Sequence record: MK250027.1
DNA length: 64,000 bases
Direction: 5' to 3' (one strand)
The notes under the pieces were generated by a model. It did not search any database and had not been told where the DNA came from. It saw only the letters and a list, made by a program, of their open reading frames with translations. Position 1 is the first letter of the stretch; the number at the start of each line of letters is the position of its first letter. A program made the translations under genes and the position numbers. This document shows, piece after piece, positions 32,112 through 56,632 of the stretch.

Positions 32112-35100
32112 TTATGCATTTTTAAAGAAACCGTCTATTGTAGTATTTTTAAAATAGAATGTAACTCTACCTTGCATAGGCATATTATTACCGTAATAAT
32201 TATTGTTTGTATTACCTGATCTATTTGGTTGATGAACACCTCGTTGTTGAGTAACAGCTCTATTACCTGGTTGAACAACTTGATGTTGCTATGTATTACC
32301 TTGTGACTTATTAGTATTACTTGGTGTATTTGTAGTAATAAGGTCAAGTAATTCTCTAATACCATCAAATCTACTAAGAATCTTATTCTCATCAAGACTT
32401 TCAAACGCAAATCGCATTCTATCTACTGCAGTCGCTATATTATTAACTTTATTAGCAAACTCTTGCAACGCTTGATTACGTTTCTTTTCATTATTAATAA
32501 TCTAATCATCTAATGCTTTAAGCGCTTTACGAGCAGATTCAAGCTTTGTCGTATATATTTCTACTTTAGATGTTGTTACCTAAATCTAAGATGTAAATGT
32601 TTTTAACCTTGATGTATAAGTTCTTAATGAACCAGAAGTTACGTTCATATTTCTGTTTATTTCAGGAGACGTTAATCTCTTTATATTATTAATGAACATA
32701 TCAATATGAAGACCTAACTATTTCTAACTATTCATTTCTCTTGAAAGATATATCATCTTCTCTGCAATTTCAAGATAAAGATCCATAAACTAACCTGTTG
32801 TTTGAAAATTAACTTTTTCTGAATTATTAGATAATGATCTCATCTATGATTCCATCTTTGTTAATACAGTTCCGAACTAAGATACAATGGATGATGGTTT
32901 AACTTTATCATTATATGTAAGTTGATTTATAATCTTTCTATATACACTGGCAATCTGATAAACGCCATCTACGAATTTCTTTGCATCTTTTGTACTCTAT
33001 ATAGATGTTTCGAATATCTTACTTGAGTTACTGAAATATGTTGCTAACTATGTCAATACAGATGTAAATTTAGTCGCAACTTCACTACCTTGTGATAATA
33101 CTTTCCCTTGATCATCTGTCATCGCTTTGATAATTTTAGATAAAGAATCTACTGATTTTTTAATAGTTCCCATTACCTACATAACTATTTTTGCAGTTGA
33201 TTGAATCTTATTATATTTCTCCATATTTTCTTTAGTAGAAAGATTATCAGAAATAATAGTAATAAAATCTACAAATGCATTAGCGATATTTTTAGATATT
33301 GTTCTAATAAAATTAGGTTGTAAACACAAATAATCTTTAGACTATGCCGTTGTTCCTTTCTTATTAGATGTTAATCCTAAGAATGGTTTTAATGTTGCTG
33401 AGAAATTTTTAACTGCAGTCATTATAGGATTTATAGTATTCTTTATAATATCTGCTATTGATTCTGCTTTTTCTATAAAACCTTCATTTGCAAAACTTTG
33501 TACAAGATAATTTATAAATTCTACAAACATTCTGCCAACTTCTCTTGCAGCCTATGTAAATGCTCCTTTTTTAAGTTTCTTAGTAATAGGTATTAATTTA
33601 CCATCTTTATCTTTTTCATAATGATCTACATAAACGCCGGTAGCTAACTTTAATATTGCATCTACATATTTTCCTAATCCTTCCATAACAGGTCCAACAG
33701 AACCACCTATTGCATTTAATGCATCCTCTGTTTTATTTCCCCAAAAAGAACCATGTCTTTCAAATACTGTAACTAACTCATCTATAAAAATACCAAATGT
33801 AGTTGCTACCGAAATAGCTGCATTTAAGAAGTCATCCGGTGTTACTTTAGCTAAATGTGGAACTGTATAATTACCGTCTTTATCTTGCATATAGTAATCT
33901 GTATATGTTCCTGTTGCTAGTTTCATTATTGCATCAACAAATTTACTAACACCATCCATAATAGGCATAATAGAATCTTTCATTGCATCCATTGCCCATA
34001 TCATATTAGGTTGTAATTGTTTAAATGATGTCCCAAGCTATTCTATAAAATTACCAAATGAAGCTGATACAAATATAGCAGATGTAAAGAATATAGAAGG
34101 GTCAACCTATTCATATTCAGGTTTACCATTTTTATCATATCCTGTTACTATTTGCATCGTTGCAACTTTAATAACTGTATCAACAAATTTAGAAACTGCA
34201 TCCATAACGGGTTCCATTACCTATCCAACAGTAGATATTGCTAACATTGCATTAACTGACATCTTATCAAACGCGTCACTTAAACATTGTAAAAATATGC
34301 TAAACTATACAGATATAGCAAGAGCTGCGTTACTAAATTCTGTTGCTGTTAATTTCTTATATATTGGGTTCTTCTTATTATCATATCCTATAATATATGT
34401 TCCTGTTGCTAGTTTCATTACAACATCTACAAATTTTCCAACAGTATCAATAATAGGATTAAGCGCTAATGTTAACACGCTTAATACAACAAGTTTTAAA
34501 GCAACCATTGCGTTAAATCCGGCACTTAATTTAGAAATAAATGTTGTAAATCCATTTGTAACTGCTTCTGCTGCCTATTCAAATACAGTTGCTGGTAAAT
34601 GTTCATACATAGGTTTACCATTATCATCATATCCTGCTATATAATTCATTGTAGCAACTTTCATTATAATATCAATATATTTTGATATTGTATTTAATAT
34701 AGGTCTTAATGCTAATGAAATAACTAATGCCATTGCAGTTCCATTAAAACCGCTAAATGCTTTAACAATAGCTTGCATAGATCCTAAAACACTATTTTTA
34801 TCATCATTACCTTTACCTATCATCAATTCAGAAAATGTTTGAATCATCTTAGCATTACATATTTCTGTTATATATTTCATCTCAGAAACAGTTAATGCTA
34901 ATACACCAAATACTGCCATAATAATAGGTGAAAAAGCTGCTGCCGCTGTTGCCTATACCATCTATACAGGATTTGGAGCTGCTGCTTTTATAACATCAAA
35001 CATTACTTCAAATAATGTTACTGCAGTCTCCCCTGTTTTTTTAAGTTTCTCAGTATTATATGGTAACATTAATTCCAACGCTTTCATGAATAATATCATG

Positions 35101-38081
35101 GTTCCTGTTACAACAGTCATCACACCTGCAATTGCCGTCATTACTACAGCACCTAATGTAATAAATGGAAGAATAGGCGTCATCGCACCTAATGCAGTCA
35201 TAAATGTTCCCATAATAGTTAACAAACCTATCATTGTAGCTGCACCTAAAAATACTGCGCCACCTTTATTTAAATCATCAATTTTCTTTGCTTCCCATGC
35301 GAATAAAACCATTGTTCCTCCAACAATATCCATCACTGCACCAATAGCGGACATAACAATACCACCTATAATAGTATCTGGTAAAAATTTCTCTAATTTA
35401 GAAACACCGTACATTACCAAACCCATTAGACCTAAAACACCTGCCATAACAGCAGCACCTAAAAATACTGCACCACCTTCATTTAATTCTAATATTTTCT
35501 TAGATTCTATTGCAAATGCTAAACATGCAGTCCCTATTACTAACATAACTATTGCAACTGCAGTCATAATAACTGCACCAACTGCTAATTCAACTGCATA
35601 CTTATCTGCGAATTTTCCTATAAAGAATAATACAGTTCCAAATATCGCTAATGTTCCTATCACAACACCTGCACCTATTAATGCGTCGTCCCACATTTTA
35701 CCAATAGGAATCAATATATCTTTAACAATCAATGATATACCTAATAAAATAAATGCCATTGCCGCTGTTGCAAATATTGCATATGCTGCTTTCTTACCAT
35801 CTACTTTAGCCAAGAAATAAGTACCTGCAATAAGAGTAATAATAATGAATAATGTAATACCCATTCCTATACCTGCTTCTTTACCATTCTAACCTATAGG
35901 AATAAGTAAATCTTTTGTAATCAATGCAATACCCATATAAATAATTGCAAGAGTAGCAGTAGCAAGAACACCCCATAAGGCTTTCTTTCCATTTACCATA
36001 TTCAATACATAAACGCCTGCAACTAATCCTGCTATTATAAACATTGTTACTATTGCACCTAAATAAACTTCCGGCGCTTTCTTTCCAATAGGTATTAAAA
36101 ACGCAACAGATATAATAGCAACCAATGCAAACACAGCAGATATTTTAATAAGATTATTTACCCCTCTATCTATACGTTTACCATGTTTATCTAATGATTT
36201 AACTGCAAATATGCCTAATGCTATAATAAAAGATATAACCAACGCACCTTTTGATACATCATCTAATCTCTTGCCAATAGGTGCCAATAATGTTGCTGAC
36301 ACCAAAGCTATAATTGCAAATACAGCAGAAATCTTTAACATTGCATCTGTAGCGTATGTTAATTTCTTATTACCTATTTTAGACAATTTATTAACAATGA
36401 AAATAGTTCCTGCAGTAAATAATGTAAGTATTCCTATAGATGCAAGTATAGTTTCCGTACTATTATTTTTAACAGTTAACGATAATAATAACATTGATAC
36501 AGATAATGACATAATCATTATTCCAATACCAGTTAAAACACCCTGTACATTTTTAAGGCTCTTATCTAATTTCTTCTCTGATAAATCTTCTATCAAACTC
36601 TTAAATCCAGAAACAGCAACTCTCATAACAATTAAACTTGCTACAACTGCAGTTAATCCAACAATCTTAGTTACAATAGATAATCCTATAATAATACCGC
36701 CTATCATACCTATTGCTGAACTTAAACTTCTTATTATCACCTATGCTCCTTTTACATCTTTAACTTTTAATTTTTTAGCTAAATCTGTAATAGTATTCTT
36801 CATGAATTTAATCAAATACCTAACTACTAAAACAGATTCAATTATTGTTTTAAAAGATGTTAGCTTAATAGTTAATGCAATGAATACAATACCGTATAAT
36901 AATGTTTTCAATGCATTATTCCATGCATTCATAAAAGATGATAAAACTTTAACTTGTTTTACATCCCATTTTTCTTTTAATATTGTGTTAAAGAAATCTA
37001 CTATTTTCTATGCACGTTTCTGTGTTAATGATTTTACAGCAAACATGAAATTAAGAATCTATATCTTCTTAATATCAAATATTACATTTAATAGCTATAC
37101 CATACTATTAACAGTTTGTGCAACCGTTTTATTATCTGGTATTTCCGTTGCAAATGCGACAAAGAAACTCGCAAGCATTTTAGCAGTAATAGGATTCAAT
37201 ACCTTCATTACTTTAAATATAGAAAACTTCTATTCAGGATCTGCTATCTTTACTAAAGGATCTAATATACCACCAATATATTTAACGTTCTCACTTATTT
37301 CTTTTCCTTTTAAATATTTAGCGATCTATCCTATGAACTAACCTAATTGTCTGCCTAATAACCAACCTCTTATAGGATTAAGACTTATCTACATTTTAAA
37401 AACATTTGATGTTACCAATGCGGATAATCCTCCCATCAAGTCTCCAATGGGTTTAATTATTTTTTGAATATCTTTATTTTTTAATTTCGTTTTACTAATA
37501 GACGAAACTAATGCAGATATAAATTTGCCTAAACGTTGTGCAGTTTTAACATCAAGCTTCCCAATATTTTCCTATAACTTAATCATATCAAGAGCAACAA
37601 GTTTGGACATTGTTTCAACAACTGCTTTAATTATACCGACACTTCGTCCTACTGATTTAGAATTCTATATTGTTAACCCTTGTATAAAATCAACTATTTT
37701 TTTTGCGCCTTCTGCATTTATTTCTGTCATTTTATTAATAGCTTTCAGAAAACTATCAATATTTGTAAATGTATTGTCATCAACTTTAAGACTTGATAAA
37801 ACTGTATTTACATTTCCTATAGATGTGGCAACTTTATTCAAAACATCATTGTCAATCTATTCCATGGATACAAGTCCTTTTGACAACTTCTCCAACTATT
37901 CTCCAACAGTTGCTGCTGATTCCTCTTTAGCAGTCTCAACGATACCCTATAACAAACTGATTATAGTAGAATCAGCTTTCTGTTCAATAGTTTCTTTCTT
38001 TTTCTCCTATTGCTGACTTACCATAGTGTCCAAAATATTAAATATACCGTTAAGTGCTTCTTCTGAAGACATTTGTGCCAT
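32112..38081 (-). CDS. Tape-measure-like protein (1989 aa, TAG=Gln) with long hydrophobic segment and internal repeats
   Basis: Track fragments 33342-36932 share one frame; ATG 38081 (MAQMSSEEALNG) to TAA 32112. Mostly helical, Ala/Ile/Leu-rich, with a multi-TM-like region at about 34900-36750. Confidence 0.7.
33380..34720 (-). repeat. Five repeats of about 85-90 aa in the tape-measure-like protein
   Basis: P[IV]xxx[IV]xK[FY][VI]Dxx[MIL]K[LV]AT...[GH]Y[DE]xxxxPxY...FxxAA...FxxF; e.g. PILNTISKYIDIIMKVATMNYIAGYDDNGKPMY, PIIDTVGKFVDVVMKLATGTYIIGYDNKKNPIY, PVMEGLGKYVDAILKLATGVYVDHYEKDKDGKL. Confidence 0.8.
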
Positions 38082-46779: not shown

Positions 46780-47469
46780 TTAAATAAACTTTTTAATATA
46801 TTTTAATGTATCATGAATATCTTGAGAAAACTTAAACAATGCTTCCTTTGTTTTAAGATTAATATCTTTATATAGTTGTTCTTTCGTTTCAAACCCTATA
46901 GCATCATCTGATTTCATCCATGATTTCTGTATAACTGCAGTATGCCTATTACTATCATTAATAGTAATATTATCCCAATTATTACCATATATATTAATTT
47001 CTGTATATACAATAGTTACTCTATTATTAATAATATTTACATCTTCTAACATAATATAAGTATCATTAATATTATAATCAAAACCACATGGTTCTACACC
47101 ATATGTTATATCTTTATAAAAATCATTATCTACTTTTCGCATAACTTTACCAGTATCTAAATAATTATGCTGAATAAAATCACGTAATTCAATATTATAT
47201 TGAGATATAAAATTACCGCATGGACATTGTTCAGTCAAAAATATTTGCATATTATATGGTAAATATCTAAAATCTTCATTATTAACATTTAAATAACGAC
47301 GTTTTACTAATTTAAATGTATAATCAATATTATTGATATTAATAGTTACTTCTTCCTTTGCACAAAAATCTTGATATGTATGCAACTTATTTAAAAGACG
47401 TTTAAATAATGTAGCAACTCTATCACAACCTAAATCATTTACTGAAATATCATATACTTCAAAATTCAT
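46780..47469 (-). CDS. Hypothetical protein
   Basis: Intact 229-aa ORF. Confidence 0.7.
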   Translation of the reverse strand: MNFEVYDISVNDLGCDRVATLFKRLLNKLHTYQDFCAKEEVTININNIDYTFKLVKRRYLNVNNEDFRYLPYNMQIFLTEQCPCGNFISQYNIELRDFIQHNYLDTGKVMRKVDNDFYKDITYGVEPCGFDYNINDTYIMLEDVNIINNRVTIVYTEINIYGNNWDNITINDSNRHTAVIQKSWMKSDDAIGFETKEQLYKDINLKTKEALFKFSQDIHDTLKYIKKFI

Positions 47470-47503
47470 AGTTATATTATTTTTTAATTAAACATTCTAT
47501 TAA

Positions 47504-47514
47504 TACAAAGATAC
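47504..47514 (-). promoter_or_regulatory. Bacteroidota-type -7 element GTATCTTTGTA
   Basis: Identical 11-mer upstream of ATG 47469. Confidence 0.75.
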
Positions 47515-47536
47515 ATAAAATTATTAAAAATAAAAA

Positions 47537-47578
47537 ATAGTAATTAAGAAAACTAATATTAAATTTCTTAATTACTAT
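47537..47578 (-). terminator. Intrinsic terminator
   Basis: 15-bp stem ATAGTAATTAAGAAA/TTTCTTAATTACTAT. Confidence 0.8.
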
Positions 47579-47587
47579 ATATTTTAA

Positions 47588-47794
47588 TTACTTTGATGAC
47601 GAGCTAGATGATGATGGAAATAATAATTTAGCAACTGTCATCAAACACAATGCATGAATATATGTAATTGTTGGTAAACCAAATAAATATGGCATAACAT
47701 AATTCCAACAAATCATAAATATAATTGCACCTAAAATAATAAATATAATTGCAACTAAAATAGTTACAATTGATGTCCATATAAAAGTTTTCAT
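47588..47794 (-). CDS. Small membrane protein (two TM)
   Basis: 68 aa with two hydrophobic stretches. Confidence 0.65.
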   Translation of the reverse strand: MKTFIWTSIVTILVAIIFIILGAIIFMICWNYVMPYLFGLPTITYIHALCLMTVAKLLFPSSSSSSSK

Positions 47795-47890
47795 ATAATT
47801 TATTTACTTGTAATTAATGCAAATAGAATATTTGATAATACATTAAATCTAAACTTCTTTTTTGCATATCTACCTTTATTTTTTATTTGT

Positions 47891-48115
47891 TCATACTTCA
47901 TTATTTCTATTATTATAATAATTAATCAAATCAACTTTCATTTCTTTATTAAATTGATTATTTCTTTTTCTATTTCTAATAACTCTATCTTCTGCTATTT
48001 CACAATTATAACGTTTCCATTTATTTAAAATAGAACGTCTATACTTTGGTTTAATTTTATCTTTATTATCATGCATATAATCATATACAGCTTGTTCTTT
48101 AAAATTATTACTCAT
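47891..48115 (-). CDS. Small basic hypothetical protein
   Basis: Intact 74-aa ORF. Confidence 0.6.
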   Translation of the reverse strand: MSNNFKEQAVYDYMHDNKDKIKPKYRRSILNKWKRYNCEIAEDRVIRNRKRNNQFNKEMKVDLINYYNNRNNEV

Positions 48116-48149
48116 AGTATATTTTATAAAGATATTTTATTTTCAAAAT

Positions 48150-48890
48150 AATAAAAAATAAACATCAAAATTGTGGTTCTAAATCTTACTGCTACTTACT
48201 AAGACTACAATTTTGATGTTTATAAAAGCAATCATTCATTATCCTGCAGCATCCATATTAGTATAAGTTTCATTGCAATAGAACTTTACAACTATAGTGA
48301 TAATCCACTTATACATTCTTTTACTCTAAAGTCTTTTATATAACTTTATCATACATAATATATGTACTGTCCATCAATAAAAGGTTCTTTATTTCATCAT
48401 GGTTTTATATCGTATAAACAACCCTCTGTATATCACTGATTCATTTCTTTACATTTAGAAATCAGGGTCTTTAAGCCTCAACGTTTGGCTGTAACTATTA
48501 TCCTCAACCATTACCAGATAATGTCATCTTGTTTTTGTGGTGCATCTCACATACCTCCTTTAATCATAAAACAAGCAAAACTACTAAGACAAATAACGTT
48601 TCTTAGAACTTCTACGAATTTACGCTCATATCAAATCATCATCTGATATAGACACCTAAATTAAGTGAATAAAGTTTACGACTCAATATAAAATTTTATA
48701 TCTCAACCTTTATCAAAAATGATTCATTAAATTCTTTTAAGGAACTTATTTCTAATTAAATGAAGGATTCATTTAAAATAGGTTCTCCCGAAAACATGCG
48801 GTTTATCCTTACTCATTATAATTATAATAAGCGTTGTTTATAGCACTCATTAGAATTCATTATGTATTATCTAACTCTCATTTATAATAT
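48150..48890 (-). ncRNA. Large structured ncRNA candidate A (about 740 nt), family unassigned
   Basis: No ORF in the track; bounded by a TAGACA-N17-TATAAA promoter and a terminator; many stems (AAATGAA/TTCATTT, ATATCAGAT/ATTTGATAT, CTAAGA/TCTTAG, CTTGTTTT/AAAACAAG, CTGATT/AATCAG). Confidence 0.55.
48158..48223 (-). terminator. Terminator closing ncRNA candidate A
   Basis: 17-bp stem ATAAACATCAAAATTGT/ACAATTTTGATGTTTAT followed on the minus strand by a T tract. Confidence 0.75.
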
Positions 48891-48896
48891 TCATAA

Positions 48897-48925
48897 TTTA
48901 TATGATATTAAAAGCAAAATGTCTA
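48897..48925 (-). promoter_or_regulatory. sigma70-like promoter TAGACA-N17-TATAAA
   Basis: Plus strand tttata (48897-48902) and tgtcta (48920-48925), 17 nt apart. Confidence 0.6.
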
Positions 48926-49003
48926 ATATCATATTATAAATTATTTGTCTCGTTAGATATTATCAAAATTTCAAAGATCTCTTCATTGTTATTTTATTAA
49001 CAA

Positions 49004-49014
49004 TACAAAGATAC
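49004..49014 (-). promoter_or_regulatory. Bacteroidota-type -7 element GTATCTTTGTA
   Basis: Identical 11-mer, pointing toward ncRNA candidate A. Confidence 0.7.
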
Positions 49015-49065
49015 ACATTCTTTTTTAATAAAAAAAATATTCTAAGAAAAAATTAAAAATATTTT

Positions 49066-49866
49066 TTATCTTACAAAACATGTTGCATATCCATGTTCAA
49101 CCTTAATAAATAATACTTCACCATTTAACCACAATTTATCAAATGGCGTTTTATCACCATTTTCTTGCATATCTTTATGTTCATCAATAGCATATTTCTC
49201 AATGTCATCAATACTACCTTTATAATAATTCTTTATGTTATCAGATTCAAGATATGCAATTCGCGACTTACATTCGTCAAGAAGTTCTTCAAATACAGGA
49301 ACAGATTTATTACAAAATCTGTCATACTCATTCTGAAAATTAATATTAGATGAACAAATACCATTTGTAATAATACGAGATACATTTTCAAGTTTCTCTA
49401 GATTATCAAGGTCTACATAAAAATCATCGCATGTAATATCATTATCTTTATACATACCAATAACATGAACTTTTGCATTCCATAATTCACACCATTTATT
49501 TGCACCATCTTCTATAAGCTGTCCAAAATCATTATCATGAAAATCAAACATAATCATGAAATTTTTATCAACCTTAATATCACTAGTTTCATATGGATCA
49601 CCTTTATACTTATGACCATCATAAAGACCTGTAAGATATGAAGAACGACTTATCCTTAAAATCTCTTTCAAACAAAAATCCTTAATTTTTTTATATTCTT
49701 CATCATTTAGATTATCAGTTCCATCAAGCAAATCTAATACTGAGTCATAATATTTTTCTTCATTTTTTACATAGTCATAAGACATATCTACAAATGGCTT
49801 GCCGAACATACGAATTTCAGATTTATTCATATCTTCTTGCATCTTCTTAAGATCTATTTCTTTCAT
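49066..49866 (-). CDS. Hypothetical protein
   Basis: Intact 266-aa ORF. Confidence 0.75.
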   Translation of the reverse strand: MKEIDLKKMQEDMNKSEIRMFGKPFVDMSYDYVKNEEKYYDSVLDLLDGTDNLNDEEYKKIKDFCLKEILRISRSSYLTGLYDGHKYKGDPYETSDIKVDKNFMIMFDFHDNDFGQLIEDGANKWCELWNAKVHVIGMYKDNDITCDDFYVDLDNLEKLENVSRIITNGICSSNINFQNEYDRFCNKSVPVFEELLDECKSRIAYLESDNIKNYYKGSIDDIEKYAIDEHKDMQENGDKTPFDKLWLNGEVLFIKVEHGYATCFVR

Positions 49867-49879
49867 ATTTCTTAATTAT

Positions 49880-50821
49880 TTACATTGTTCCATCATTAGG
49901 TTGCAAACACATAATTCCACGTTCTCGCCACATCTTAACCACTTTAGAAGAATCTTCCAATACAAACAATACATTATAATAAGGTTCAATATATTCCTTA
50001 TATAAATTATATTTACAATCTGGACCCTTTGTAAAATTCTTCAAAGGTCTCATTAACACCTTATCAACATTACCAATAAGGTTATTCTTCAACCAATCTT
50101 CTGTTGCATGTCTAATATCGTCTGTATCTTCTCTACCTGTCAATATAATGACATCCACTGATTTATCGGCAATATATGTATTAACAAGTTGGCAAAGTTG
50201 CTTACATGGTTTATCATCCCTCATGCTATCAGCAGCACCATTACCATAAAATGGCCGACCTTGAAGATTAAAACAAAGTGTAGCATCCATATCTACAAGA
50301 ATACAATTCTTCTTCGTTTCATCAAACTTCTTAAAGCTATTATATTGCTTATTATTAAGTTGTGTAGCAATAAAGTTTCTATATCGCCTATAAGTAGATT
50401 TGATAACGGATTCACCTATAGGATTAGATCTAAATGAATCTCTTCTAATACATTCCTCTACCGATACATCAAAGAAATCCTTAAATTCCAATGTATAATG
50501 ATACTCATTATGTGTCTCATTATACTTATCAATTCTATCTTGCATTTCTTTCCATCCCTTTGGATTCAGGTTCATATTATCCATAATGATATTCCAACCT
50601 TTTTCCATAGGTGATTTAAAAAATGCATCTGTCATATCTTTAATAACAGAAAGTTTCTCACGTGATTCTACCCAATACTCACCGAACATGTTTCTAAGAG
50701 AATCCCAATTAATTCTAATTCTCTCAGTTGGTTTCTCCTTTACCCAATGTTCAGCGAATGTAGACTTACCAGACGCTTGAATACCTCTTGTCAATATAAT
50801 TACCCTTTCTTTCATATTCAT
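49880..50821 (-). CDS. pseT: Polynucleotide 5'-kinase / 3'-phosphatase (T4 PseT-like)
   Basis: P-loop RGIQASGKST, RINWDSLR, IMDNMNL; HAD motifs DMDATL, TGRE, LEDS. Confidence 0.92.
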   Translation of the reverse strand: MNMKERVIILTRGIQASGKSTFAEHWVKEKPTERIRINWDSLRNMFGEYWVESREKLSVIKDMTDAFFKSPMEKGWNIIMDNMNLNPKGWKEMQDRIDKYNETHNEYHYTLEFKDFFDVSVEECIRRDSFRSNPIGESVIKSTYRRYRNFIATQLNNKQYNSFKKFDETKKNCILVDMDATLCFNLQGRPFYGNGAADSMRDDKPCKQLCQLVNTYIADKSVDVIILTGREDTDDIRHATEDWLKNNLIGNVDKVLMRPLKNFTKGPDCKYNLYKEYIEPYYNVLFVLEDSSKVVKMWRERGIMCLQPNDGTM

Positions 50822-50839
50822 ATTTTATTTAATTAGCAA

Positions 50840-50850
50840 TACAAAGATAC
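50840..50850 (-). promoter_or_regulatory. Bacteroidota-type -7 element GTATCTTTGTA
   Basis: Identical 11-mer upstream of pseT. Confidence 0.75.
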
Positions 50851-50991
50851 ATAATTTTTAGGAAAATAAAAAATTAATTATTATCAAATACTATATTTTC
50901 AACAAAATTAAGTTTCTTATAATTTCTATTCTTTGAATACTTATCGATTATTTTTAAAAAATCGACCATAAATCTATAATCAAATTCTGGT

Positions 50992-51210
50992 TTATTCATC
51001 TTTTAACATCATTGCAAGAATAACAGATTTCATACATGTCATATATCCTTTAAGATACATATCTTTCAACATCAACCAAATTCTTTCAAATTCATCTGGT
51101 ATCTTTTCACTTGTATCATCAGATATATTAGAGTTACCGACAATAGTTTTAAGCTCTCGCCGTGCTTGATAATCAGCCATTGCATTTAATTTATTCTTAT
51201 TAAATTCCAT
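50992..51210 (-). CDS. Hypothetical protein
   Basis: Intact 72-aa ORF. Confidence 0.65.
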   Translation of the reverse strand: MEFNKNKLNAMADYQARRELKTIVGNSNISDDTSEKIPDEFERIWLMLKDMYLKGYMTCMKSVILAMMLKDE

Positions 51211-51213
51211 ATT

Positions 51214-51909
51214 TTATTTAGATTTTAATCCTAAACAATATTCTTTATTAATATTATCAATAAAAGAATTAATTCTAATTCTTAGTAATTCTGATTCTTC
51301 TTCAAATTCCTTAATTTTATCAATGTCTTTTTTAATATCATCTATATTATGATTTAACAAATATTCATACGTATTAGGTTTAGATACTTTAAAATAATAA
51401 ATATCTTCATTCATAATATTATTATGATTTAAAGCACATAATAAATGATAAGATTCCTCATTTGCAGATGAACCATGATAACCATATCCATCACTTTCAA
51501 AATATATACATAATGGTCCATAACTATAATGTCCACCTGGATATACAGTTGTTCTTAATGAGTTAATATGAAATGATTTACATATATTATATTTCTTATC
51601 TAAATAATCATTCAATAACTTATTAATACTCATCATTTGAAGATCTAATAATCTATCTAAATTTATATCATTATTCTTACTTATATATACACTGGAAACT
51701 TCTTTTACAACTGAATCAATATCTAATTCATAATTCTCGTCTGTATATAAATGAAGAATACAAAGAAATAATCTATGTATATATTCTTTCTTATCGTAAT
51801 TTATATATGCAGTTTTTAATTTTTCTACATAATCATCTGTCACCTTCTTATTGATGTTATATTCGATATTCTTTATAAATTCTTTTTGCTCATTCTATGT
51901 CATAATCAT
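51214..51909 (-). CDS. Hypothetical protein (231 aa; TAG at codon 5)
   Basis: Track GTG start extends to ATG 51909 (MIMT(Q)NEQKEF), overlapping the upstream TGA in an ATGA arrangement. Confidence 0.65.
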
Positions 51910-52103
51910 TGCTCTTTTATTTTTCTTAAAATAAATTTAGGTTCTTGATAATAAAAATAATCTATTGTTTTATCATCTATAATGTTCAAATTATATAATG
52001 CTTGTGAAAACCTAATATCCTTATATGTCGTAAGATACTTCTTTAATATATCTAATATTTCCATATTAGCATTGTATCTCTCAAATGTTTCTTTAGTTTC
52101 CAT
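51906..52103 (-). CDS. Hypothetical protein
   Basis: 65-aa ORF, translationally coupled on both sides. Confidence 0.65.
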   Translation of the reverse strand: METKETFERYNANMEILDILKKYLTTYKDIRFSQALYNLNIIDDKTIDYFYYQEPKFILRKIKEQ

Positions 52104-52501
52104 TAGAATAACGGATTAATTTTTATCTCGTTTGTTTTACTATATTCTTGTACATCTAAATTCAATGTTTCATTTAGCCAATCAGCAATTAAATGTCTGT
52201 GACAAAATTCATCTGGTTTTTCAAAACAACATAAAGCACAATCTTTATTACCTGTTATAAACTTTAATCTATCTATAAATAAAGTTGGTTCTTTAAATAT
52301 AGATAAAACTTCAGCTTTATATCGTTTTCTAAACTCTTGATGATTGCTTCTACAATTATTCAATATATCTGGTGTAGGTGCGATACTTGCTAAGTTAACC
52401 CCTTTGAAATCATTTGGCGGATAACAACACACACCTATAGGAATAATATTATTCTTTATAAGATTATTAATATTACCAAAATAGCTTGTATATATTTTCA
52501 T
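52103..52501 (-). CDS. DUF488 family protein
   Basis: MKIYTSYF, IAPT, ALCCFEKPDEFCHRHLIADWL. Confidence 0.8.
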   Translation of the reverse strand: MKIYTSYFGNINNLIKNNIIPIGVCCYPPNDFKGVNLASIAPTPDILNNCRSNHQEFRKRYKAEVLSIFKEPTLFIDRLKFITGNKDCALCCFEKPDEFCHRHLIADWLNETLNLDVQEYSKTNEIKINPLF

Positions 52502-52710
52502 ACACGAAATAAACTATATATTTCATTATAAGTTTCTTTTGATATTGGATATGATACTATATTACAATATTCTCCGAAATTCTGATCAACATCTACCATA
52601 TAACCTTGTTTATATGTATCATAATAGCATCTTACTATATGTGAAACATTAACTAAACCTGAATATGTATCAATAAATTTATTATAATTTTTATTTTTTA
52701 ACTTAATCAT
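52498..52710 (-). CDS. Hypothetical protein (70 aa)
   Basis: Likely start is ATG 52710 (MIKLKNK); the longer track version overlaps the + strand T5orf172 gene. Confidence 0.6.
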   Translation of the reverse strand: MIKLKNKNYNKFIDTYSGLVNVSHIVRCYYDTYKQGYMVDVDQNFGEYCNIVSYPISKETYNEIYSLFRV

Positions 52711-52769
52711 AATACTAAAACTATATAACTTAATGTTTATATAATATATAAATGTTTTTGTTTTATTTA

Positions 52770-53093
52770 ATGGGAGGTTTTGTTTATTTAATTTGCGATC
52801 CTGAATAGAATTGTTATAAAATAGGTGTAACAAGGAATATAGCATAGAATAGATTAAAGTAGTTATAGACTGGTAACTCATCAAAATTACATATGGTTTC
52901 AAATATATATTGTGAATATCCTTTTAGACTTGAAACAATGTTACATAATAAATTCAATCATAAACGTGCAAATGGTGAATGGTTCTATTTAGAATAGGAA
53001 GATATAAGTAATTTTAAAACTATATGTGAAGAAACAATATAGATGATTAATGTAATGAAAGATAATCCATTCTTTAGTAAAGATTTAAAATGA
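52770..53093 (+). CDS. T5orf172 / GIY-YIG-like domain protein (107 aa; all six Gln codons are TAG; absent from track)
   Basis: GFVYLI...YKIGVT...NRLK(Q)L(Q)TGN...LHNKF..KRANGEWF. Confidence 0.9.
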
Positions 53094-53135
53094 ATAAAGG
53101 TGATATAAGAATAATAAAACTTATATCACCTTTAT
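53094..53135. terminator. Bidirectional terminator (GGTGATA family)
   Basis: 16-bp stem ATAAAGGTGATATAAG/CTTATATCACCTTTAT. Confidence 0.85.
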
Positions 53136-53137
53136 TT

Positions 53138-53413
53138 TTAATTATCGTTCTTTTCTAATTCCTTATTAATATAATCCATATCTTCATCTGTTAAATCGCC
53201 AAATGATGTGAATAAATCTTTATTAATAAGTCCATATCTCATAAGATATGCTAATGTCATTCTTACAGCATAATCTGCAATATCATAAGTTGTTGTAACT
53301 TCTAAATTTTGTAAATCTGGATTATTACCAACTACATTAGAAACTTTATCAACAATCTTATCACATGTTTTTTTCATTGAATTTAATTCATTATTTGTTA
53401 ATTTGGTACTCAT
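53138..53413 (-). CDS. Hypothetical protein (91 aa)
   Basis: Likely start is ATG 53413 (MSTKLTNNE), downstream of TAAACT-N18-TATAAT. Confidence 0.65.
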   Translation of the reverse strand: MSTKLTNNELNSMKKTCDKIVDKVSNVVGNNPDLQNLEVTTTYDIADYAVRMTLAYLMRYGLINKDLFTSFGDLTDEDMDYINKELEKNDN

Positions 53414-53469
53414 AATATCATTAAATAATTTAATTATTATATTACAACGATATGCATAAAGTTTAGAAA

Positions 53470-53985
53470 TAAAAAATGAGTTATTAGACTTATGCACAAT
53501 CTAATAACTCACAAACACTTTATTCTAAATTTATTATATTTACATCTTATTTAAAGATGTCCCTCATGTTGTTATTCGTACGAACATAAGTTTCTGCCTC
53601 TTATGATTCACTTTAACGTTTGCCCGTTATATAATGAATGTTCATACTGAACTTCGTTATGTCCATAAGGACAAATGGCTGAGAACTTGACCAACACCTA
53701 CTCTCAATGCTGTAACGTTGGAGTTACATGTTCACACAACTCTTATTTCTAAGAGGTTGAGAGCATACCCACGACTTTTGTAAAAAATCGTAAACTCTTA
53801 CTTGATAGGTTTCATAGAAATTCATTTCATACCAACTTCCTTGGAAGGATTCAATGTGTCCCCACATTTAGCACGATACTACTCTTACTATTCTCATGTC
53901 TTTCCTTGCGGTACTCGAATCATGTCTACATATTACAGTAGAATAAGGGTATTTTAACCACCAAGTGTCGCACACTTTTGCTTAT
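53470..53985 (-). ncRNA. Large structured ncRNA candidate B (about 510 nt) with GNRA tetraloops; family unassigned
   Basis: No ORF; visibly higher GC than the flanks; stems AATGTG-GGGA-CACATT, CTCTTA-GAAA-TAAGAG, CC-GCAA-GG flanked by AGTA/AAAG, TGTAAC/GTTACA, TGTCC/GGACA, long-range CTCTCAA/TTGAGAG; TATAAT at 53991-53996. Confidence 0.7.
53477..53511 (-). terminator. Terminator closing ncRNA candidate B
   Basis: TGAGTTATTAGA/TCTAATAACTCA with a T tract on the minus strand. Confidence 0.8.
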
Positions 53986-54039
53986 ACATAATTATATGTT
54001 AAATAAAATAATTTCCAATATTATTATTCTTATTATATA

Positions 54040-54580
54040 TTCTTTAGACTTGAAAGACGAGGTGCGACCAATAGCATTTCTTCCTTTTGAGAAGAACCCA
54101 CTAAATCGCCTTTCTGAAATTTCGTTACACCAATGTAACCATATTTCTACTCTTATAACTTACCTATTGTTTTTCAATAGTAATCTTACCATTTCTGAAC
54201 AAGTTACCAGCTTGTATAAATTATTTGGTTTATAATTTATATAAGATTCATTATAACAATTAATATTAGCACTGGGAATTGGTATTCCGATCACTAAATA
54301 TCCATAAACTTAAACTTCTATTGTATTACTACTCACATCAGTTGTCTATCAAACTTCCAATGTATATAAACTTCATCTCAGGAATTATCCCATCAATTTC
54401 CCATTTATACAGGCACTTACTAAGTTTGGTTTTCTGTAGAATGCTCATTATTCATAAACATCGATAAACATGTCTACTGTTTACCTTTATCACATCACTG
54501 CTTTATCCTTACCCCACCGAAACCATGGGTTTATATTTCAAAGAACTCATCTTGAATAAAATAAATTCATTCAAATTTTA
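54040..54580 (-). ncRNA. Large structured ncRNA candidate C (about 540 nt)
   Basis: No credible ORF; TAGACT-N17-TATAAT immediately upstream; stems CTATTG/CAATAG, GTTACA/TGTAAC, TTCTTC/GAAGAA, TATAAATTAT/ATAATTTATA, GGAAT/ATTCC, ACAAG/CTTGT. Confidence 0.55.
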
Positions 54581-54585
54581 TACTT

Positions 54586-54614
54586 ATTATATAATCAATA
54601 ATTTAAAAAGTCTA
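54586..54614 (-). promoter_or_regulatory. sigma70-like promoter TAGACT-N17-TATAAT
   Basis: Plus strand attata and agtcta 17 nt apart; a second copy TAGACT-N17-TATAAA at 54702-54730. Confidence 0.65.
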
Positions 54615-54756
54615 TATTTTAATAGATATATTTCAAAATTTTTATTGTTAACTGTTATTAAAAATATTAAATATTAAAATCTTTTTAAACTTGATTCTAA
54701 ATTTATATATTAAATTAAATAGAAAGTCTATATTTCAATACAATATTTTTAAAAAA

Positions 54757-54933
54757 TTATTTTAAACAATATTCTAAATCAAATATAAAGTCTCCTAATA
54801 GTTCAATCTTTTTCCTAATAAGTTCTGATTCTAAATCAAATTTATGATCTATACAAAAATTTAATTCAATATATAACTTATCTCTATTAGATTTCCATTT
54901 ATCTATTAATTCTTTCTTTGTTAATTTTTCCAT
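54757..54933 (-). CDS. Small hypothetical protein (58 aa; absent from track)
   Basis: MEKLTKKELIDKWKSNRDKLY... to TAA; starts 1 nt after the upstream stop. Confidence 0.6.
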   Translation of the reverse strand: MEKLTKKELIDKWKSNRDKLYIELNFCIDHKFDLESELIRKKIELLGDFIFDLEYCLK

Positions 54934-54934
54934 C

Positions 54935-55459
54935 TTAAAAATTCATTATATTTACACCAGCAATAGAAAGAAATTTTATATTCTTAATAATTTCACATGC
55001 TTTATCTTCTGGAAATATAATTTTAAAATCATCATAAACATCCATTACTTCTTGCCATTTACATTCATCTCTTGGTGCTTCCATAGAAGTATATATTTTA
55101 GCAATAAGCATTCTTTTTTTAAATTGATTATAAAACGTACTTCTTGGATACATCCCATGTTCATATCCTCCATTTGGATGATGTCCCATCCAATCAGGTT
55201 CAATATAATGACTCCATTTTACTCCTTCAAAATATAAAGTCTTATCTGGTTTTACACTAATAGAAATACTTTTATTTTTATCTTTTTGATATTCTATAAA
55301 TTCAAGAAAATTATTTAATGCATCAAGATATTTCTCTGCATATTCTGCTTCTTCTTTTTTATCAAAAATATAACTAAAACCAAAAGTATTATCTACAACT
55401 TCATATTTTACTTTTGTCTCAATCTTATTAATCATATTATTATTTTTATAATTAATCAT
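54935..55459 (-). CDS. Hypothetical protein
   Basis: Intact ORF; start probably ATG 55459 or 55434. Confidence 0.65.
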   Translation of the reverse strand: MINYKNNNMINKIETKVKYEVVDNTFGFSYIFDKKEEAEYAEKYLDALNNFLEFIEYQKDKNKSISISVKPDKTLYFEGVKWSHYIEPDWMGHHPNGGYEHGMYPRSTFYNQFKKRMLIAKIYTSMEAPRDECKWQEVMDVYDDFKIIFPEDKACEIIKNIKFLSIAGVNIMNF

Positions 55460-55604
55460 TTTCTCCCCATGGTAATTCACTATCTGGATCTATTACATCA
55501 CCACCATGATTACCATCTACATTAAAACCTGATTGAAAATTACTCATAATATTCATGTCAACAGGAATAACATTAATATTTGGTTTTATATAATTCTTTT
55601 TCAT
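55452..55604 (-). CDS. 50-aa peptide with MKKxYxKP leader-like motif (absent from track)
   Basis: MKKNYIKPNINVIPVDMNIMSNFQSGFNVDGNHGGDVIDPDSELPWGEND. Confidence 0.65.
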   Translation of the reverse strand: MKKNYIKPNINVIPVDMNIMSNFQSGFNVDGNHGGDVIDPDSELPWGEND

Positions 55605-55647
55605 ATTAAAATTCTTCAACTCGTTATTCAAATAATGTTTTCTAAAA

Positions 55648-56199: not shown

Positions 56200-56632
56200 N
56201 NNNNNNNNNNNNNNNNNNNNNNNNNNNNNNNNNNNNNNNNNNNNNNNNNNNNNNNNNNNNNNNNNNNNNNNNNNNNNNNNNNNNNNNNNNNNNNNNNNNN
56301 NNNNNNNNNNNNNNNNNNNNNNNNNNNNNNNNNNNNNNNNNNNNNNNNNNNNNNNNNNNNNNNNNNNNNNNNNNNNNNNNNNNNNNNNNNNNNNNNNNNN
56401 NNNNNNNNNNNNNNNNNNNNNNNNNNNNNNNNNNNNNNNNNNNNNNNNNNNNNNNNNNNNNNNNNNNNNNNNNNNNNNNNNNNNNNNNNNNNNNNNNNNN
56501 NNNNNNNNNNNNNNNNNNNNNNNNNNNNNNNNNNNNNNNNNNNNNNNNNNNNNNNNNNNNNNNNNNNNNNNNNNNNNNNNNNNNNNNNNNNNNNNNNNNN
56601 NNNNNNNNNNNNNNNNNNNNNNNNNNNNNNNN
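56200..56632. other. Assembly gap (run of N)
   Basis: About 430 N characters. Confidence 0.98.

What the first reader, a model, noticed from the sequence alone, without database searches (positions are those of the whole stretch)
54040..54580. Third structured non-coding block, in tandem with candidate B and possibly one 1.1-kb transcript
Seen: a perfect TAGACT-N17-TATAAT directly upstream, at least six clean hairpins and no strong terminator before block B. Its 3' part carries GUCGCAC, complementary to the GUGCGAC at the 5' end of B about 90 nt downstream. It shares GUAAGGAUAAA and UGAUAAAGGU in the same order with candidate A (54502/54483 versus 48802/48706). Inference: either a related RNA or the 5' half of a bipartite or processed RNA. 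The short shared words could be chance in AT-rich DNA.
Basis: partly seen in the sequence, partly recalled or inferred. Interest (0 to 1): 0.68.

Follow-up and report, generated by a model that had tools for sequence, protein, structure and literature searches.

The report
GOLLD giant RNA in Lak megaphage
The flagged block is the front half of a single, roughly 1,000-base non-coding RNA of the known GOLLD family (giant phage RNAs that self-assemble into hollow cages; function unknown), here in a Prevotella Lak megaphage, where the standard Rfam cut-off misses it.

Summary
The window is a Prevotella Lak-B megaphage (100% identical to Lak-B2/B4/B7/B8). Blocks "C" (54040-54580) and "B" (about 53580-53980), both on the minus strand, are one RNA gene of the GOLLD family.

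- **Family match.** Rfam GOLLD (RF02032) aligns end to end (1-416/416) to 54114-53676 at E=1.3e-15, 62.8 bits. That is below the curated cut-off of 150, so default scans miss it. An independent profile built from 25 non-Lak GOLLD cores hits the window once (E=6.7e-33).
- **What block C is.** It holds the variable GOLLD 5' domain plus the first hairpin of the conserved 3' domain. The AT-rich gap between C and B is the family's variable linker, which holds a tRNA in one relative.
GUCGCAC:GUGCGAC is a real helix across that linker. It forms in 114 of 117 relatives and is 99.4% paired, with compensatory changes at all seven positions.
- **Expression.** RNA-library contigs of 832-971 nt from four studies bridge C and B and stop at the conserved borders.
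- **Kinship with candidate A.** Not supported.
- **Unusual traits.** The gene has its own promoter-like box and terminator, a conserved ~100-nt 3' extension, and no tRNA within 38 kb.

Verdict: a new member of a known kind. Its function is unknown, as it is for the whole family.

The parts
54586..54614 (-). Promoter-like box: TAGACT (54614-54609), 17-nt spacer, TATAAT (54591-54586). It is part of the conserved ATATAGACTTTTTAAATTAT.G.TTATATAA.
   Evidence: Conserved in Lak-C1/A2 and in Lak-A1, where it sits about 240 nt further upstream. Four copies in Lak-C1 against 0 in the reversed control, one directly before a tRNA cluster. That it acts as a promoter is inferred.
54700..54734 (-). Second, upstream copy of the same box: AATATAGACTTT at 54734-54723, followed by a 17-nt spacer and TATAAA.
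   Evidence: The same tandem pair is seen in the nearest held record, G001.
54115..54577 (-). GOLLD 5' domain, about 460 nt, the variable half of the RNA.
   Evidence: Conservation against Lak-A/C starts at about 54577. It is 86.9% identical to Lak-C1, with 1-2-nt indels and compensatory stem changes. It is partly alignable to the 5' domains of L121 and L163. No ORF under code 11, code 4 or TAG=Q.
54502..54529 (-). Opening hairpin of the 5' domain (CCCAU-GGUUUCG-GUGGG) followed by UAAGGAUAAA, the recurrent GOLLD 5' start motif.
   Evidence: Exact UAAGGAUAA is present in 27 of 77 non-redundant upstream regions, 86-393 nt (26 of 27 at 286-393 nt) before the 3' domain. The hairpin stem differs in L163 and L121 while the GCCUUC-type loop is kept.
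54046..54114 (-). First hairpin of the conserved GOLLD 3' domain (Rfam model positions 1 to about 64), with the UCAAAAG loop.
   Evidence: 100% identical in Lak-C1 and Lak-A1, one difference in Lak-A2. Its three stem segments are 86-94% paired with covariation across 22 sequences.
54062..54068 (-). 5' strand (GUCGCAC) of the helix that spans the linker. It sits in the bulge on the 3' side of the first hairpin.
53985..54045 (-). AT-rich variable linker. It corresponds to the disordered, cage-interior linker of solved GOLLD structures, which holds a tRNA in some members.
   Evidence: 68.9% identical to Lak-C1, with indels. Replaced by 68 different letters in one RNA-library contig. Holds a tRNA in L017. 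PMC12286853.
53967..53983 (-). Invariant AAGCAAAAGU (53983->53974) followed by the 3' strand GUGCGAC (53973->53967) of the linker-spanning helix.
53676..53984 (-). Core of the GOLLD 3' domain, running from AAGCAAAAGU through the CGCAAGG loop to CUCAGCC.
   Evidence: Rfam RF02032 alignment to model position 416. nhmmer profile of 25 non-Lak cores: 53984-53677, E=6.7e-33. 98.1% identical to Lak-C1.
53575..53675 (-). Conserved 3' extension beyond the end of the family model. It contains four short hairpins and was seen only in the Lak lineage.
   Evidence: 91.9% identical to Lak-A/C. Covered by RNA-library contigs down to 53592. Absent in L017, L036, L026 and L121, whose RNAs end at the last family hairpin.
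53466..53574 (-). Variable tail (53574-53513) and an intrinsic terminator (stem-loop 53512-53476 plus a U-run).
   Evidence: The terminator stem has a different sequence in Lak-A/C but still pairs. The tail is only 41.9% identical.

Best explanation
[quoted passage not shown] A variable tail and an intrinsic terminator follow, ending near 53466. The gene is carried by a Prevotella Lak-B megaphage.

The AT-rich gap is the family's variable linker. Block B is the rest of the 3' domain.

Shown here: family membership by sequence and structure, covariation of the helices, one copy per genome, and presence of the whole unit as contigs of about 830-970 nt in RNA libraries.

Inferred by analogy with solved GOLLD structures, not tested here: the RNA folds into two domains and self-assembles without protein into a closed homo-oligomeric cage of 10-14 copies in solved members, with the linker pointing inward.

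Inferred: transcription starts a few bases after the TAGACT-N17-TATAAT box and most transcripts end or are trimmed near 53590.

The biological role is unknown for the whole family. The current hypotheses involve encapsulating or sequestering translation components such as tRNAs or ribosomes during phage infection.
For: - **Identity of the window.** 100% identical to Prevotella phage Lak-B2/B4/B7/B8.
- **Not coding.** No ORF under code 11, code 4 or TAG=Q, although TAG=Q clearly applies elsewhere in the window. Indels between Lak clades are 1-2 nt.
- **Family match.** Rfam GOLLD covers 1-416/416 at 54114-53676, E=1.3e-15. A bridging relative, L017, scores 96 bits, E=1.3e-25, with a tRNA in the linker. 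A profile built without any Lak sequence gives a single hit, E=6.7e-33.
- **Structure.** Across 22 sequences 93.4% of cells are paired, against 62% in shuffles and 46% or less in slid controls. The linker-spanning helix is 99.4% paired, with double changes at 7 of 7 pairs. RNAalifold predicts that helix on its own. It forms 7 of 7 pairs in 114 of 117 instances and in 25 of 27 distinct sequence combinations, against 39 of 550 with foreign strands.
- **Conservation gradient as described for the family.** 3' core 98%, first hairpin 100%, 5' domain 87%, linker 69%, flanking genes 68-76%.
- **5' domain.** It opens with the recurrent hairpin + UAAGGAUAA motif and is alignable to L163 and L121.
- **RNA libraries.** In four studies, contigs of 971, 832, 926 and 880 nt bridge C and B and end at 53592-53677 and 54510-54561, with word depth up to about 3,800.
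- **Family properties.** PMC12286853 and PMC12990946.
Against: - The Rfam score (62.8 bits) is well below the curated cut-off of 150, and 10 model pairs are flagged non-canonical in the Lak alignment.
- The usual tRNA neighbourhood is missing. There is no tRNA in the 64-kb window, and the nearest in Lak-C1 are 38 and 46 kb away.
- Contigs from RNA libraries cannot prove transcription, strand or ends (tool caveat).
- A TTGGAA-N16-TATAAT match inside the linker (54018-53991) could in principle start a separate B transcript.
- In Lak-A1 about 240 nt separate the promoter box from the RNA start, so the exact 5' end is uncertain.
- Oligomerisation and function are untested here.
Confidence: 0.93

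Rival explanations
1. C and B are two separately transcribed small RNAs that merely lie in tandem. B would start from the TTGGAA-N16-TATAAT match inside the AT-rich spacer.
For: There is a promoter-like match at 54018-53991 on the minus strand. B is far better conserved than C, 98% against 87%.
Against: The family model spans the spacer, starting at 54114 inside C. The covarying 7-bp helix joins the two sides. There is no terminator between them. RNA-library contigs from four studies bridge the spacer. Promoter-like hexamers are at chance frequency in this AT-rich DNA. The difference in conservation is the known 5'/3' asymmetry of GOLLD.
Confidence: 0.03
2. It is a long structured 5' leader or cis-regulatory element of the downstream gene at 53497-53138 (119 aa).
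For: It is on the same strand and directly upstream of that ORF.
Against: A strong intrinsic terminator (15-bp stem plus U-run) lies between the RNA and the ORF, and it is kept by compensatory change in Lak-A/C. RNA-library contigs stop at 53592-53677 and none reaches the ORF. Related GOLLDs sit in tRNA arrays with unrelated downstream genes.
Confidence: 0.02
3. It is a protein-coding gene read in an unusual code, or a decayed pseudogene. This phage does recode TAG.
For: The first 38 kb of the window only make long ORFs with TAG=Q.
Against: The stretch has no ORF on the RNA (minus) strand longer than 47 aa, and none on either strand over 109 aa, under code 11, code 4 or TAG=Q. Indels between clades are 1 and 2 nt. 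Substitutions are compensatory in stems. The stretch is more conserved than the neighbouring genes, which is the opposite of a pseudogene.
Confidence: 0.005
4. It is a different class of large RNA (ROOL, a group I or II intron, RNase P RNA, tmRNA) that only resembles GOLLD locally.
For: No family reaches its curated cut-off.
Against: Only GOLLD gives a significant match in a permissive search of the stretch; the rest is noise at E of about 3-5. ARAGORN finds no tRNA or tmRNA. The GOLLD alignment is end to end, and an independent profile confirms it.
Confidence: 0.01

Closest known systems
GOLLD RNA (Rfam RF02032; Weinberg et al. 2009; cryo-EM structures of env-38 and Streptococcus agalactiae GOLLD, PMC12286853 and PMC12990946)
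   Same: Two-domain layout with a conserved 3' domain of about 440 nt and a variable 5' domain of about 460 nt. First hairpin with a UCAAAAG loop, a variable linker, the invariant AAGCAAAAGU, a CGCAAGG loop and a terminal CUCAGCC. The covarying linker-spanning helix. Phage-borne. Size above 800 nt. High abundance in RNA libraries.
   Different: - Scores 62.8 bits, below the curated 150.
- At most 66% identical in the core to the nearest non-Lak relative.
- Not in or beside a tRNA array.
- An autonomous unit with its own promoter-like box and separate terminator.
- A conserved ~100-nt 3' extension after the last family hairpin, giving about 1.0 kb mature and about 1.1 kb primary length.
- Host phage is a 550-kb, TAG-recoded megaphage of Bacteroidota.
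GOLLD copies in tRNA arrays of other phage or MAG contigs: L163 (uncultured bacterium bin), L121 and L017 (IMG/VR)
   Same: L163 aligns over 718 nt (63.5%), including half of the 5' domain. L121 shares the 5' start and several 5' motifs. L017 shares the first hairpin and core.
   Different: All three lie between or next to tRNA genes, and L017 even has one inside the linker. L121 and L017 end at the last family hairpin without the Lak extension.
ROOL RNA (RF03087)
   Same: Large ornate phage-associated RNA, often near tRNAs, that forms RNA-only cages. The function is equally unknown (PMC5737381, PMC12286853).
   Different: No sequence or structure match here. ROOL has intertwined rather than separate 5' and 3' regions.

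Membership tests
GOLLD RNA (RF02032) | Match to the family covariance model of the conserved 3' domain | tested here: inconclusive
   The alignment is full length (1-416/416) at 54114-53676, E=1.3e-15, but scores 62.8 bits against the curated cut-off of 150. By the curators' threshold it fails; by E-value and coverage it passes. An independent nhmmer profile of 25 non-Lak cores gives E=6.7e-33, 109 bits, covering positions 2-297 of 302.
GOLLD RNA (RF02032) | Conserved helices of the 3' domain are kept with covariation | tested here: met
   48 pairs in 9 helices over 22 sequences including Lak-B. 93.4% of cells are paired against 62.0% in shuffles (0 of 500 reach it) and 46% or less when slid. 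42 pairs show double changes. This covers only part of the model's pairs. MAFFT and RNAalifold did not recover the 3'-most helices.
GOLLD RNA (RF02032) | Helix joining the bulge of the first hairpin to the bases just after AAGCAAAAGU, across the variable linker | tested here: met
   GUCGCAC:GUGCGAC in Lak. The helix forms 7 of 7 pairs in 114 of 117 instances and in 25 of 27 distinct combinations, against 39 of 550 in the control. It is 99.4% paired. I could not match it to a P-number of the published model, because the original 2009 paper is not held.
GOLLD RNA (RF02032) | Conserved 3' half, less conserved 5' half, variable linker | tested here: met
   3' core 98.1%, first hairpin 100%, 5' domain 86.9%, linker 68.9% identity between Lak-B and Lak-C1. 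In one RNA-library variant the 5' part is replaced by 370 unlike letters while the 3' part is kept.
GOLLD RNA (RF02032) | Size above about 800 nt | tested here: met
   The conserved unit 54577-53575 is about 1,000 nt. RNA-library contigs are 832-971 nt.
GOLLD RNA (RF02032) | Phage or prophage location, often in or near tRNA islands (typical, not obligatory) | tested here: not met
   Phage location: yes. tRNA proximity: no. There is no tRNA in the 64-kb window, and in Lak-C1 the nearest tRNAs are 38 and 46 kb away. The literature says 'often', so this is a departure in context, not an exclusion. The same promoter-like box does precede a tRNA cluster elsewhere in Lak-C1.
GOLLD RNA (RF02032) | RNA-only homo-oligomeric cage | not testable with these tools
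   Known from cryo-EM of other members. It would need in-vitro transcription with mass photometry or cryo-EM.
ROOL RNA / group I and II introns / RNase P RNA / tmRNA | Match to the respective Rfam model or ARAGORN | tested here: not met
   No such match at E of 10 or less on 53400-54700 or 47400-55000. ARAGORN finds nothing.

The most novel reading that the evidence does not exclude
The Lak RNA may represent a distinct architectural subtype of GOLLD. It would be an autonomous stable-RNA gene uncoupled from tRNA arrays, with a conserved extra 3' module of about 100 nt (four hairpins) and a tRNA-free linker.

Its cage could therefore differ in subunit number or carry an added docking surface. 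In a phage that switches genetic code during infection, it might act on the translation apparatus, for example by sequestering ribosomes, tRNAs or a release factor. It might also act together with the neighbouring unclassified ~750-nt RNA candidate A.
Probability: 0.25. Interest if true: 0.6.

Novelty: new member of a known kind. Interest (0 to 1): 0.4.

Why it matters
GOLLD is one of the largest and most elaborate bacterial and phage RNAs. It was recently shown to build protein-free nanocages, yet it has no known function.

- **A gap in annotation.** The GenBank Lak records carry no annotation at all, no paper in the searched library links GOLLD to megaphages, and the curated Rfam threshold misses this RNA.
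- **A natural variant without tRNA context.** This copy has its own transcription signals and an added 3' module. That helps separate what is intrinsic to GOLLD from what comes from co-transcription with tRNAs.
- **It appears abundant in gut samples.** It reaches high word depth in gut and pig-gut RNA libraries.
- **The family is under-called.** A simple three-anchor pattern returned at least 114 pattern matches, presumably GOLLD cores, in IMG/VR, mostly on 80-190-kb contigs, and the one below-threshold relative tested (L017) also scores under Rfam's cut-off.

For a specialist this is useful rather than surprising, because GOLLD is already known to be phage-borne.

Tried and rejected
- **Coding readings.** ORF lists under code 11, code 4 and TAG=Q show nothing in 53518-54935.
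- **Rfam at curated thresholds.** The whole window gave 0 hits. A permissive search on 7.6 kb also missed GOLLD because of the speed filters. Only a 1.3-kb slice showed it.
- **Kinship of A and C.** No significant local alignment. Candidate A has no Rfam hit and no GOLLD core. A 17-mer scan for candidate A in IMG/VR found only Lak-like contigs plus two chance matches.
- **The genome search with RF02032 on the complete Lak-C1 and Lak-A1 records.** The loose first look produced no candidates even at the known locus, so that blank says nothing. Copy number was taken from a pattern search instead.
- **5' domain across lineages.** RNAalifold on Lak + L163 + L121 failed because the MAFFT alignment was too noisy to give a consensus fold. 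Only motif-level conservation and the opening hairpin can be claimed. Within Lak, 11 pairs show double changes.
- **Chance hits in the scans.** 9 of the 15 genome contigs pattern hits were chance matches by profile check. Most hits of the first 17-mer scan were also chance.
- **Antisense ORFs.** The exact-sequence look-up of the ORFs at 53978-54235 and 54279-54467 found nothing.
- **Papers not held.** The 2009 GOLLD paper and the 2020 Mycobacterium GOLLD paper are not held, so published helix numbers could not be mapped.
- **Covariance model not attempted.** At about 300 positions, calibration would exceed the tool's time limit, so nhmmer was used instead.
- **N-run.** The run of N near 56200-56600 was left untouched.

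Full report
**What the window is.** A 1,151-base query covering blocks B and C is 100% identical to Prevotella phage Lak-B2, B4, B7 and B8. It is 99.6-99.7% identical to the other Lak-B genomes and 89-90% identical to Lak-A and Lak-C. The first 38 kb of the window make long ORFs only when TAG is read as glutamine: 2,896 aa with 38 TAG codons, and 2,604 aa with 19. From about 45 kb onward the genes lie on the minus strand and read in the standard code. The finding lies in this standard-code part.

**Checking the observation.**
- TAGACT-N17-TATAAT lies at 54614-54586.
- The fold of 54040-54580 is more stable than shuffles, z = -3.1.
- The only minus-strand terminator-like site is at 53512-53476, downstream of block B.
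- The two words shared with candidate A are exact.

**It is RNA, not protein.** The stretch 53518-54935 has no ORF worth the name under code 11, code 4 or TAG=Q. Aligned with Lak-C1, A2 and A1, it differs by indels of one or two bases. Its substitutions keep stems paired, for example UAUAAAUUAU/AUAAUUUAUA in Lak-B against UAUGGAUUAU/AUAAUCCAUG in Lak-C1. The neighbouring genes are 68-76% identical between Lak-B and Lak-A/C. The non-coding unit is much better conserved, with sharp borders at about 54577 and about 53575.

**What it is.** A 17-base word from block B pulled out Lak relatives from IMG/VR. It also pulled out partial matches in other large phage contigs, all inside tRNA arrays. In one of these, L017 on a 386-kb contig, a tRNA sits exactly where Lak has the AT-rich spacer between C and B, and the flanks read GGUCAAC...GUUGGUC in place of GUCGCAC...GUGCGAC.

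A permissive Rfam search of that locus gave GOLLD (RF02032) at 96.2 bits, E=1.3e-25, full length. The same search on window 53400-54700 gave GOLLD at 54114-53676, covering model positions 1-416 of 416, 62.8 bits, E=1.3e-15. The curated cut-off is 150 bits. That explains why the whole-window scan found nothing. A 7.6-kb permissive scan also missed it because of the speed filters.

As an independent test I collected GOLLD 3' cores from IMG/VR with a three-anchor pattern, which gave at least 114 loci. I built a profile from 25 cores, none of them from Lak, and searched the window. There is a single hit, 53984-53677 on the minus strand, E=6.7e-33, covering positions 2-297 of 302.

**Anatomy.** All coordinates are on the minus strand.

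| Part | Coordinates | Note |
|---|---|---|
| 5' domain | 54577-54115 | opens with a hairpin plus UAAGGAUAAAG |
| First 3'-domain hairpin | 54114-54046 | UCAAAAG loop; GUCGCAC in its 3' bulge |
| Variable linker | 54045-53985 | AT-rich |
| Invariant word + helix strand | 53983-53967 | AAGCAAAAGU then GUGCGAC |
| 3' core | to 53676 | ends in CUCAGCC |
| 3' extension | 53675-53575 | conserved, seen only in Lak |
| Variable tail | 53574-53513 | |
| Terminator | 53512-53466 | stem differs in Lak-A/C but still pairs |

Identity to Lak-C1 by part is 86.9% for the 5' domain, 100% for the first hairpin, 68.9% for the linker, 98.1% for the 3' core, 91.9% for the extension and 41.9% for the tail. A conserved 3' half, a looser 5' half and a free linker are what the literature describes for GOLLD. 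In the solved structure the 5' region is residues 1-420, the 3' region 421-833 and the disordered linker 497-538, and the linker sometimes carries a tRNA (PMC12286853; PMC12990946).

**The 7-bp pairing.**
- The seven bases after AAGCAAAAGU pair 7 of 7 with a heptamer about 15 nt after the UCAAAAG loop in 114 of 117 scoreable instances.
- The pairing holds in 25 of 27 distinct sequence combinations. With 3' strands borrowed from other lineages it holds in 39 of 550.
- On a 22-sequence alignment that includes Lak-B, RNAalifold predicts this helix by itself.
- A formal count gives 99.4% of cells paired, with double changes at all seven pairs. The whole tested structure (48 pairs) is 93.4% paired, against 62% in shuffles and 46% or less when partners are slid.

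The pairing is real, conserved, and part of the family.

**One transcript or two.** Assembled contigs from four RNA libraries of four different studies (gut and pig-gut samples) were laid on 53300-54900. Contigs of 971, 832, 926 and 880 nt cover 53592-54561, 53677-54510, 53630-54511 and 53676-54510 (the last two in separate pieces, their middle parts replaced by unlike sequence). They bridge the linker, and nearly all of each contig's length lies inside this unit. Word depth reaches about 3,800 in one run.

Contigs cannot prove strand, ends or transcription, and relatives' flanks are too divergent to be laid. Even so, contig lengths that equal the conserved unit in four studies fit a stable RNA of about 0.85-1.0 kb. 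One variant keeps the 3' domain but has 370 unlike letters in place of 368 in the 5' domain, and 68 in place of 58 in the linker. That again matches the family's pattern.

**Transcription signals.** Plain sigma-70-like matches are at chance level in this AT-rich DNA. The longer box ATATAGACTTT-N14-17-TATAA is a better marker.
- It is conserved upstream of the RNA in Lak-C1 and A2. In Lak-A1 it is also present, but about 240 nt further away because of an insertion.
- It is duplicated in Lak-B at 54734-54700.
- It occurs four times in the 540-kb Lak-C1 genome and zero times in the reversed control. One copy ends 24 nt before a tRNA-Glu/Leu/Thr cluster and one lies 75 nt before a 472-aa ORF.

That it is a promoter is an inference, and the host's usual promoter type is different. 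The exact 5' end is open.

**Context and relatives.** Lak-C1, Lak-A1 and the nearest held Lak-B record each carry one copy. Lak-C1 has 32 tRNA genes, the nearest of them 38 and 46 kb from the RNA, and the 64-kb window has none. This departs from the usual tRNA-array setting of GOLLD. L121, L163 and L017 all lie among tRNAs. L121 and L017 end at the last family hairpin, and L163's copy (about 945 nt) runs up to within about 10 nt of the next tRNA.

The nearest non-Lak relative is L163, a small contig of an unnamed bin. It is 65.9% identical over the core and 63.5% over 718 nt, which includes half of the 5' domain. Two contigs binned to rumen Prevotellaceae also carry GOLLD cores. The neighbours of the Lak gene are mostly small proteins without family. 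A polynucleotide kinase/phosphatase lies about 3 kb downstream.

**Candidate A.** The two shared words do not extend into an alignment: the score is 28 against 26.8 +/- 2.9 for shuffles. In Lak-A/C, both A's copies and the GOLLD's copies of these words differ from the Lak-B words. Candidate A has no GOLLD core and no Rfam match.

GUAAGGAUAAA is meaningful within C, because hairpin + UAAGGAUAA is a recurrent start of GOLLD 5' domains (27 of 77 non-redundant upstream regions). Candidate A is itself a conserved, ORF-free unit of about 750 nt with its own covarying terminator. It is a separate, unclassified candidate.

**Mechanism.**
- Shown here: family membership, structure conservation, single copy, and presence as a unit in RNA libraries.
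- Inferred from solved relatives: folding into two domains and protein-free assembly into a closed cage with the linker inside.
- Unknown for the whole family: the biological role. Published ideas are encapsulation or sequestration of tRNAs, ribosomes or other components during infection.

**Novelty and verdict.** No paper in the searched library links GOLLD to Lak phages or megaphages, the GenBank Lak records are unannotated, and the curated threshold misses this RNA. It is a new, divergent member of a known family. It has an unusual context (no tRNAs, its own signals) and an added 3' module. It is useful for annotation and for work on GOLLD function, but not surprising in kind.

Noticed in passing
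window 48150-48990 (minus strand): Candidate A is a second ORF-free unit of about 750 nt. Its core is about 90% identical between Lak-B and Lak-A/C, with indels of 1, 2, 9 and 14 nt. It has its own intrinsic terminator (48215-48150) whose stem covaries, and 15 pairs with double compensatory changes. There is no Rfam match and no GOLLD core, and it was found only in Lak-like contigs. It is an unclassified large RNA candidate.
   Followed up: partly
window 49006-49013 (minus strand): TATCTTTG, a match to the Bacteroidota -7 promoter box (TAnnTTTG; consensus from my own knowledge), lies just upstream of candidate A inside a stretch that is invariant in Lak-A/B/C. A similar box precedes the GOLLD of L163.
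   Followed up: no
window 1-38100: Giant ORFs appear only when TAG is read as glutamine: 3384-12074 is 2,896 aa with 38 TAG codons, 18791-26605 is 2,604 aa, and 32112-38081 on the minus strand is 1,989 aa. Genes from about 45 kb onward contain no in-frame TAG. This is the known Lak code switch, visible within one window.
   Followed up: partly
window 54935-55631 (minus strand): The 181-aa ORF (54935-55480) and the overlapping 59-aa ORF are absent from Lak-A and Lak-C, where the flanks are contiguous. This is a Lak-B-specific insertion just upstream of the GOLLD promoter region. It has no family match.
   Followed up: no
window 53078-53143: A near-perfect palindrome of about 60 nt lies in the gap between the ORFs ending at 53138 and 52902. 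It hits microRNA-precursor models on both strands at noise level and matches itself in reverse in Lak-A/C. It is probably a bidirectional terminator or a protein-binding site. GC skew changes sign around 52600-53100.
   Followed up: no
window 49880-50821 (minus strand): A T4-type polynucleotide 5'-kinase/3'-phosphatase (PHROG 505, E=2.8e-58; Pfam HAD_PNKP), an RNA-repair enzyme, lies between candidate A and the GOLLD gene. A DUF488 protein is at 52103-52501.
   Followed up: no
L168 (Lak-C1 MK250029.1 335900-337500), locus 129-669: The same promoter-like box ATATAGACTTT-N-TATAA is followed here by about 540 nt without any ORF before a 310-aa gene. This may be another non-coding RNA of the phage.
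   Followed up: no
L039-L144 (IMG/VR), L154, L157, L162, L163, L165, L166 (genome contigs): A three-anchor pattern (AAGCAAAAGU ... CGCAAGG ... CUCAGC) returned at least 114 pattern matches, presumably GOLLD 3' cores, in IMG/VR, mostly on 80-190-kb contigs, plus six in bacterial MAG contigs, two of them binned to rumen Prevotellaceae. The one below-threshold relative tested (L017) scores 96 bits against Rfam's cut-off of 150, so the family is probably under-called by default scans.
   Followed up: partly
window about 56200-56600: A run of N (composition 0 in the profile).
   Followed up: no
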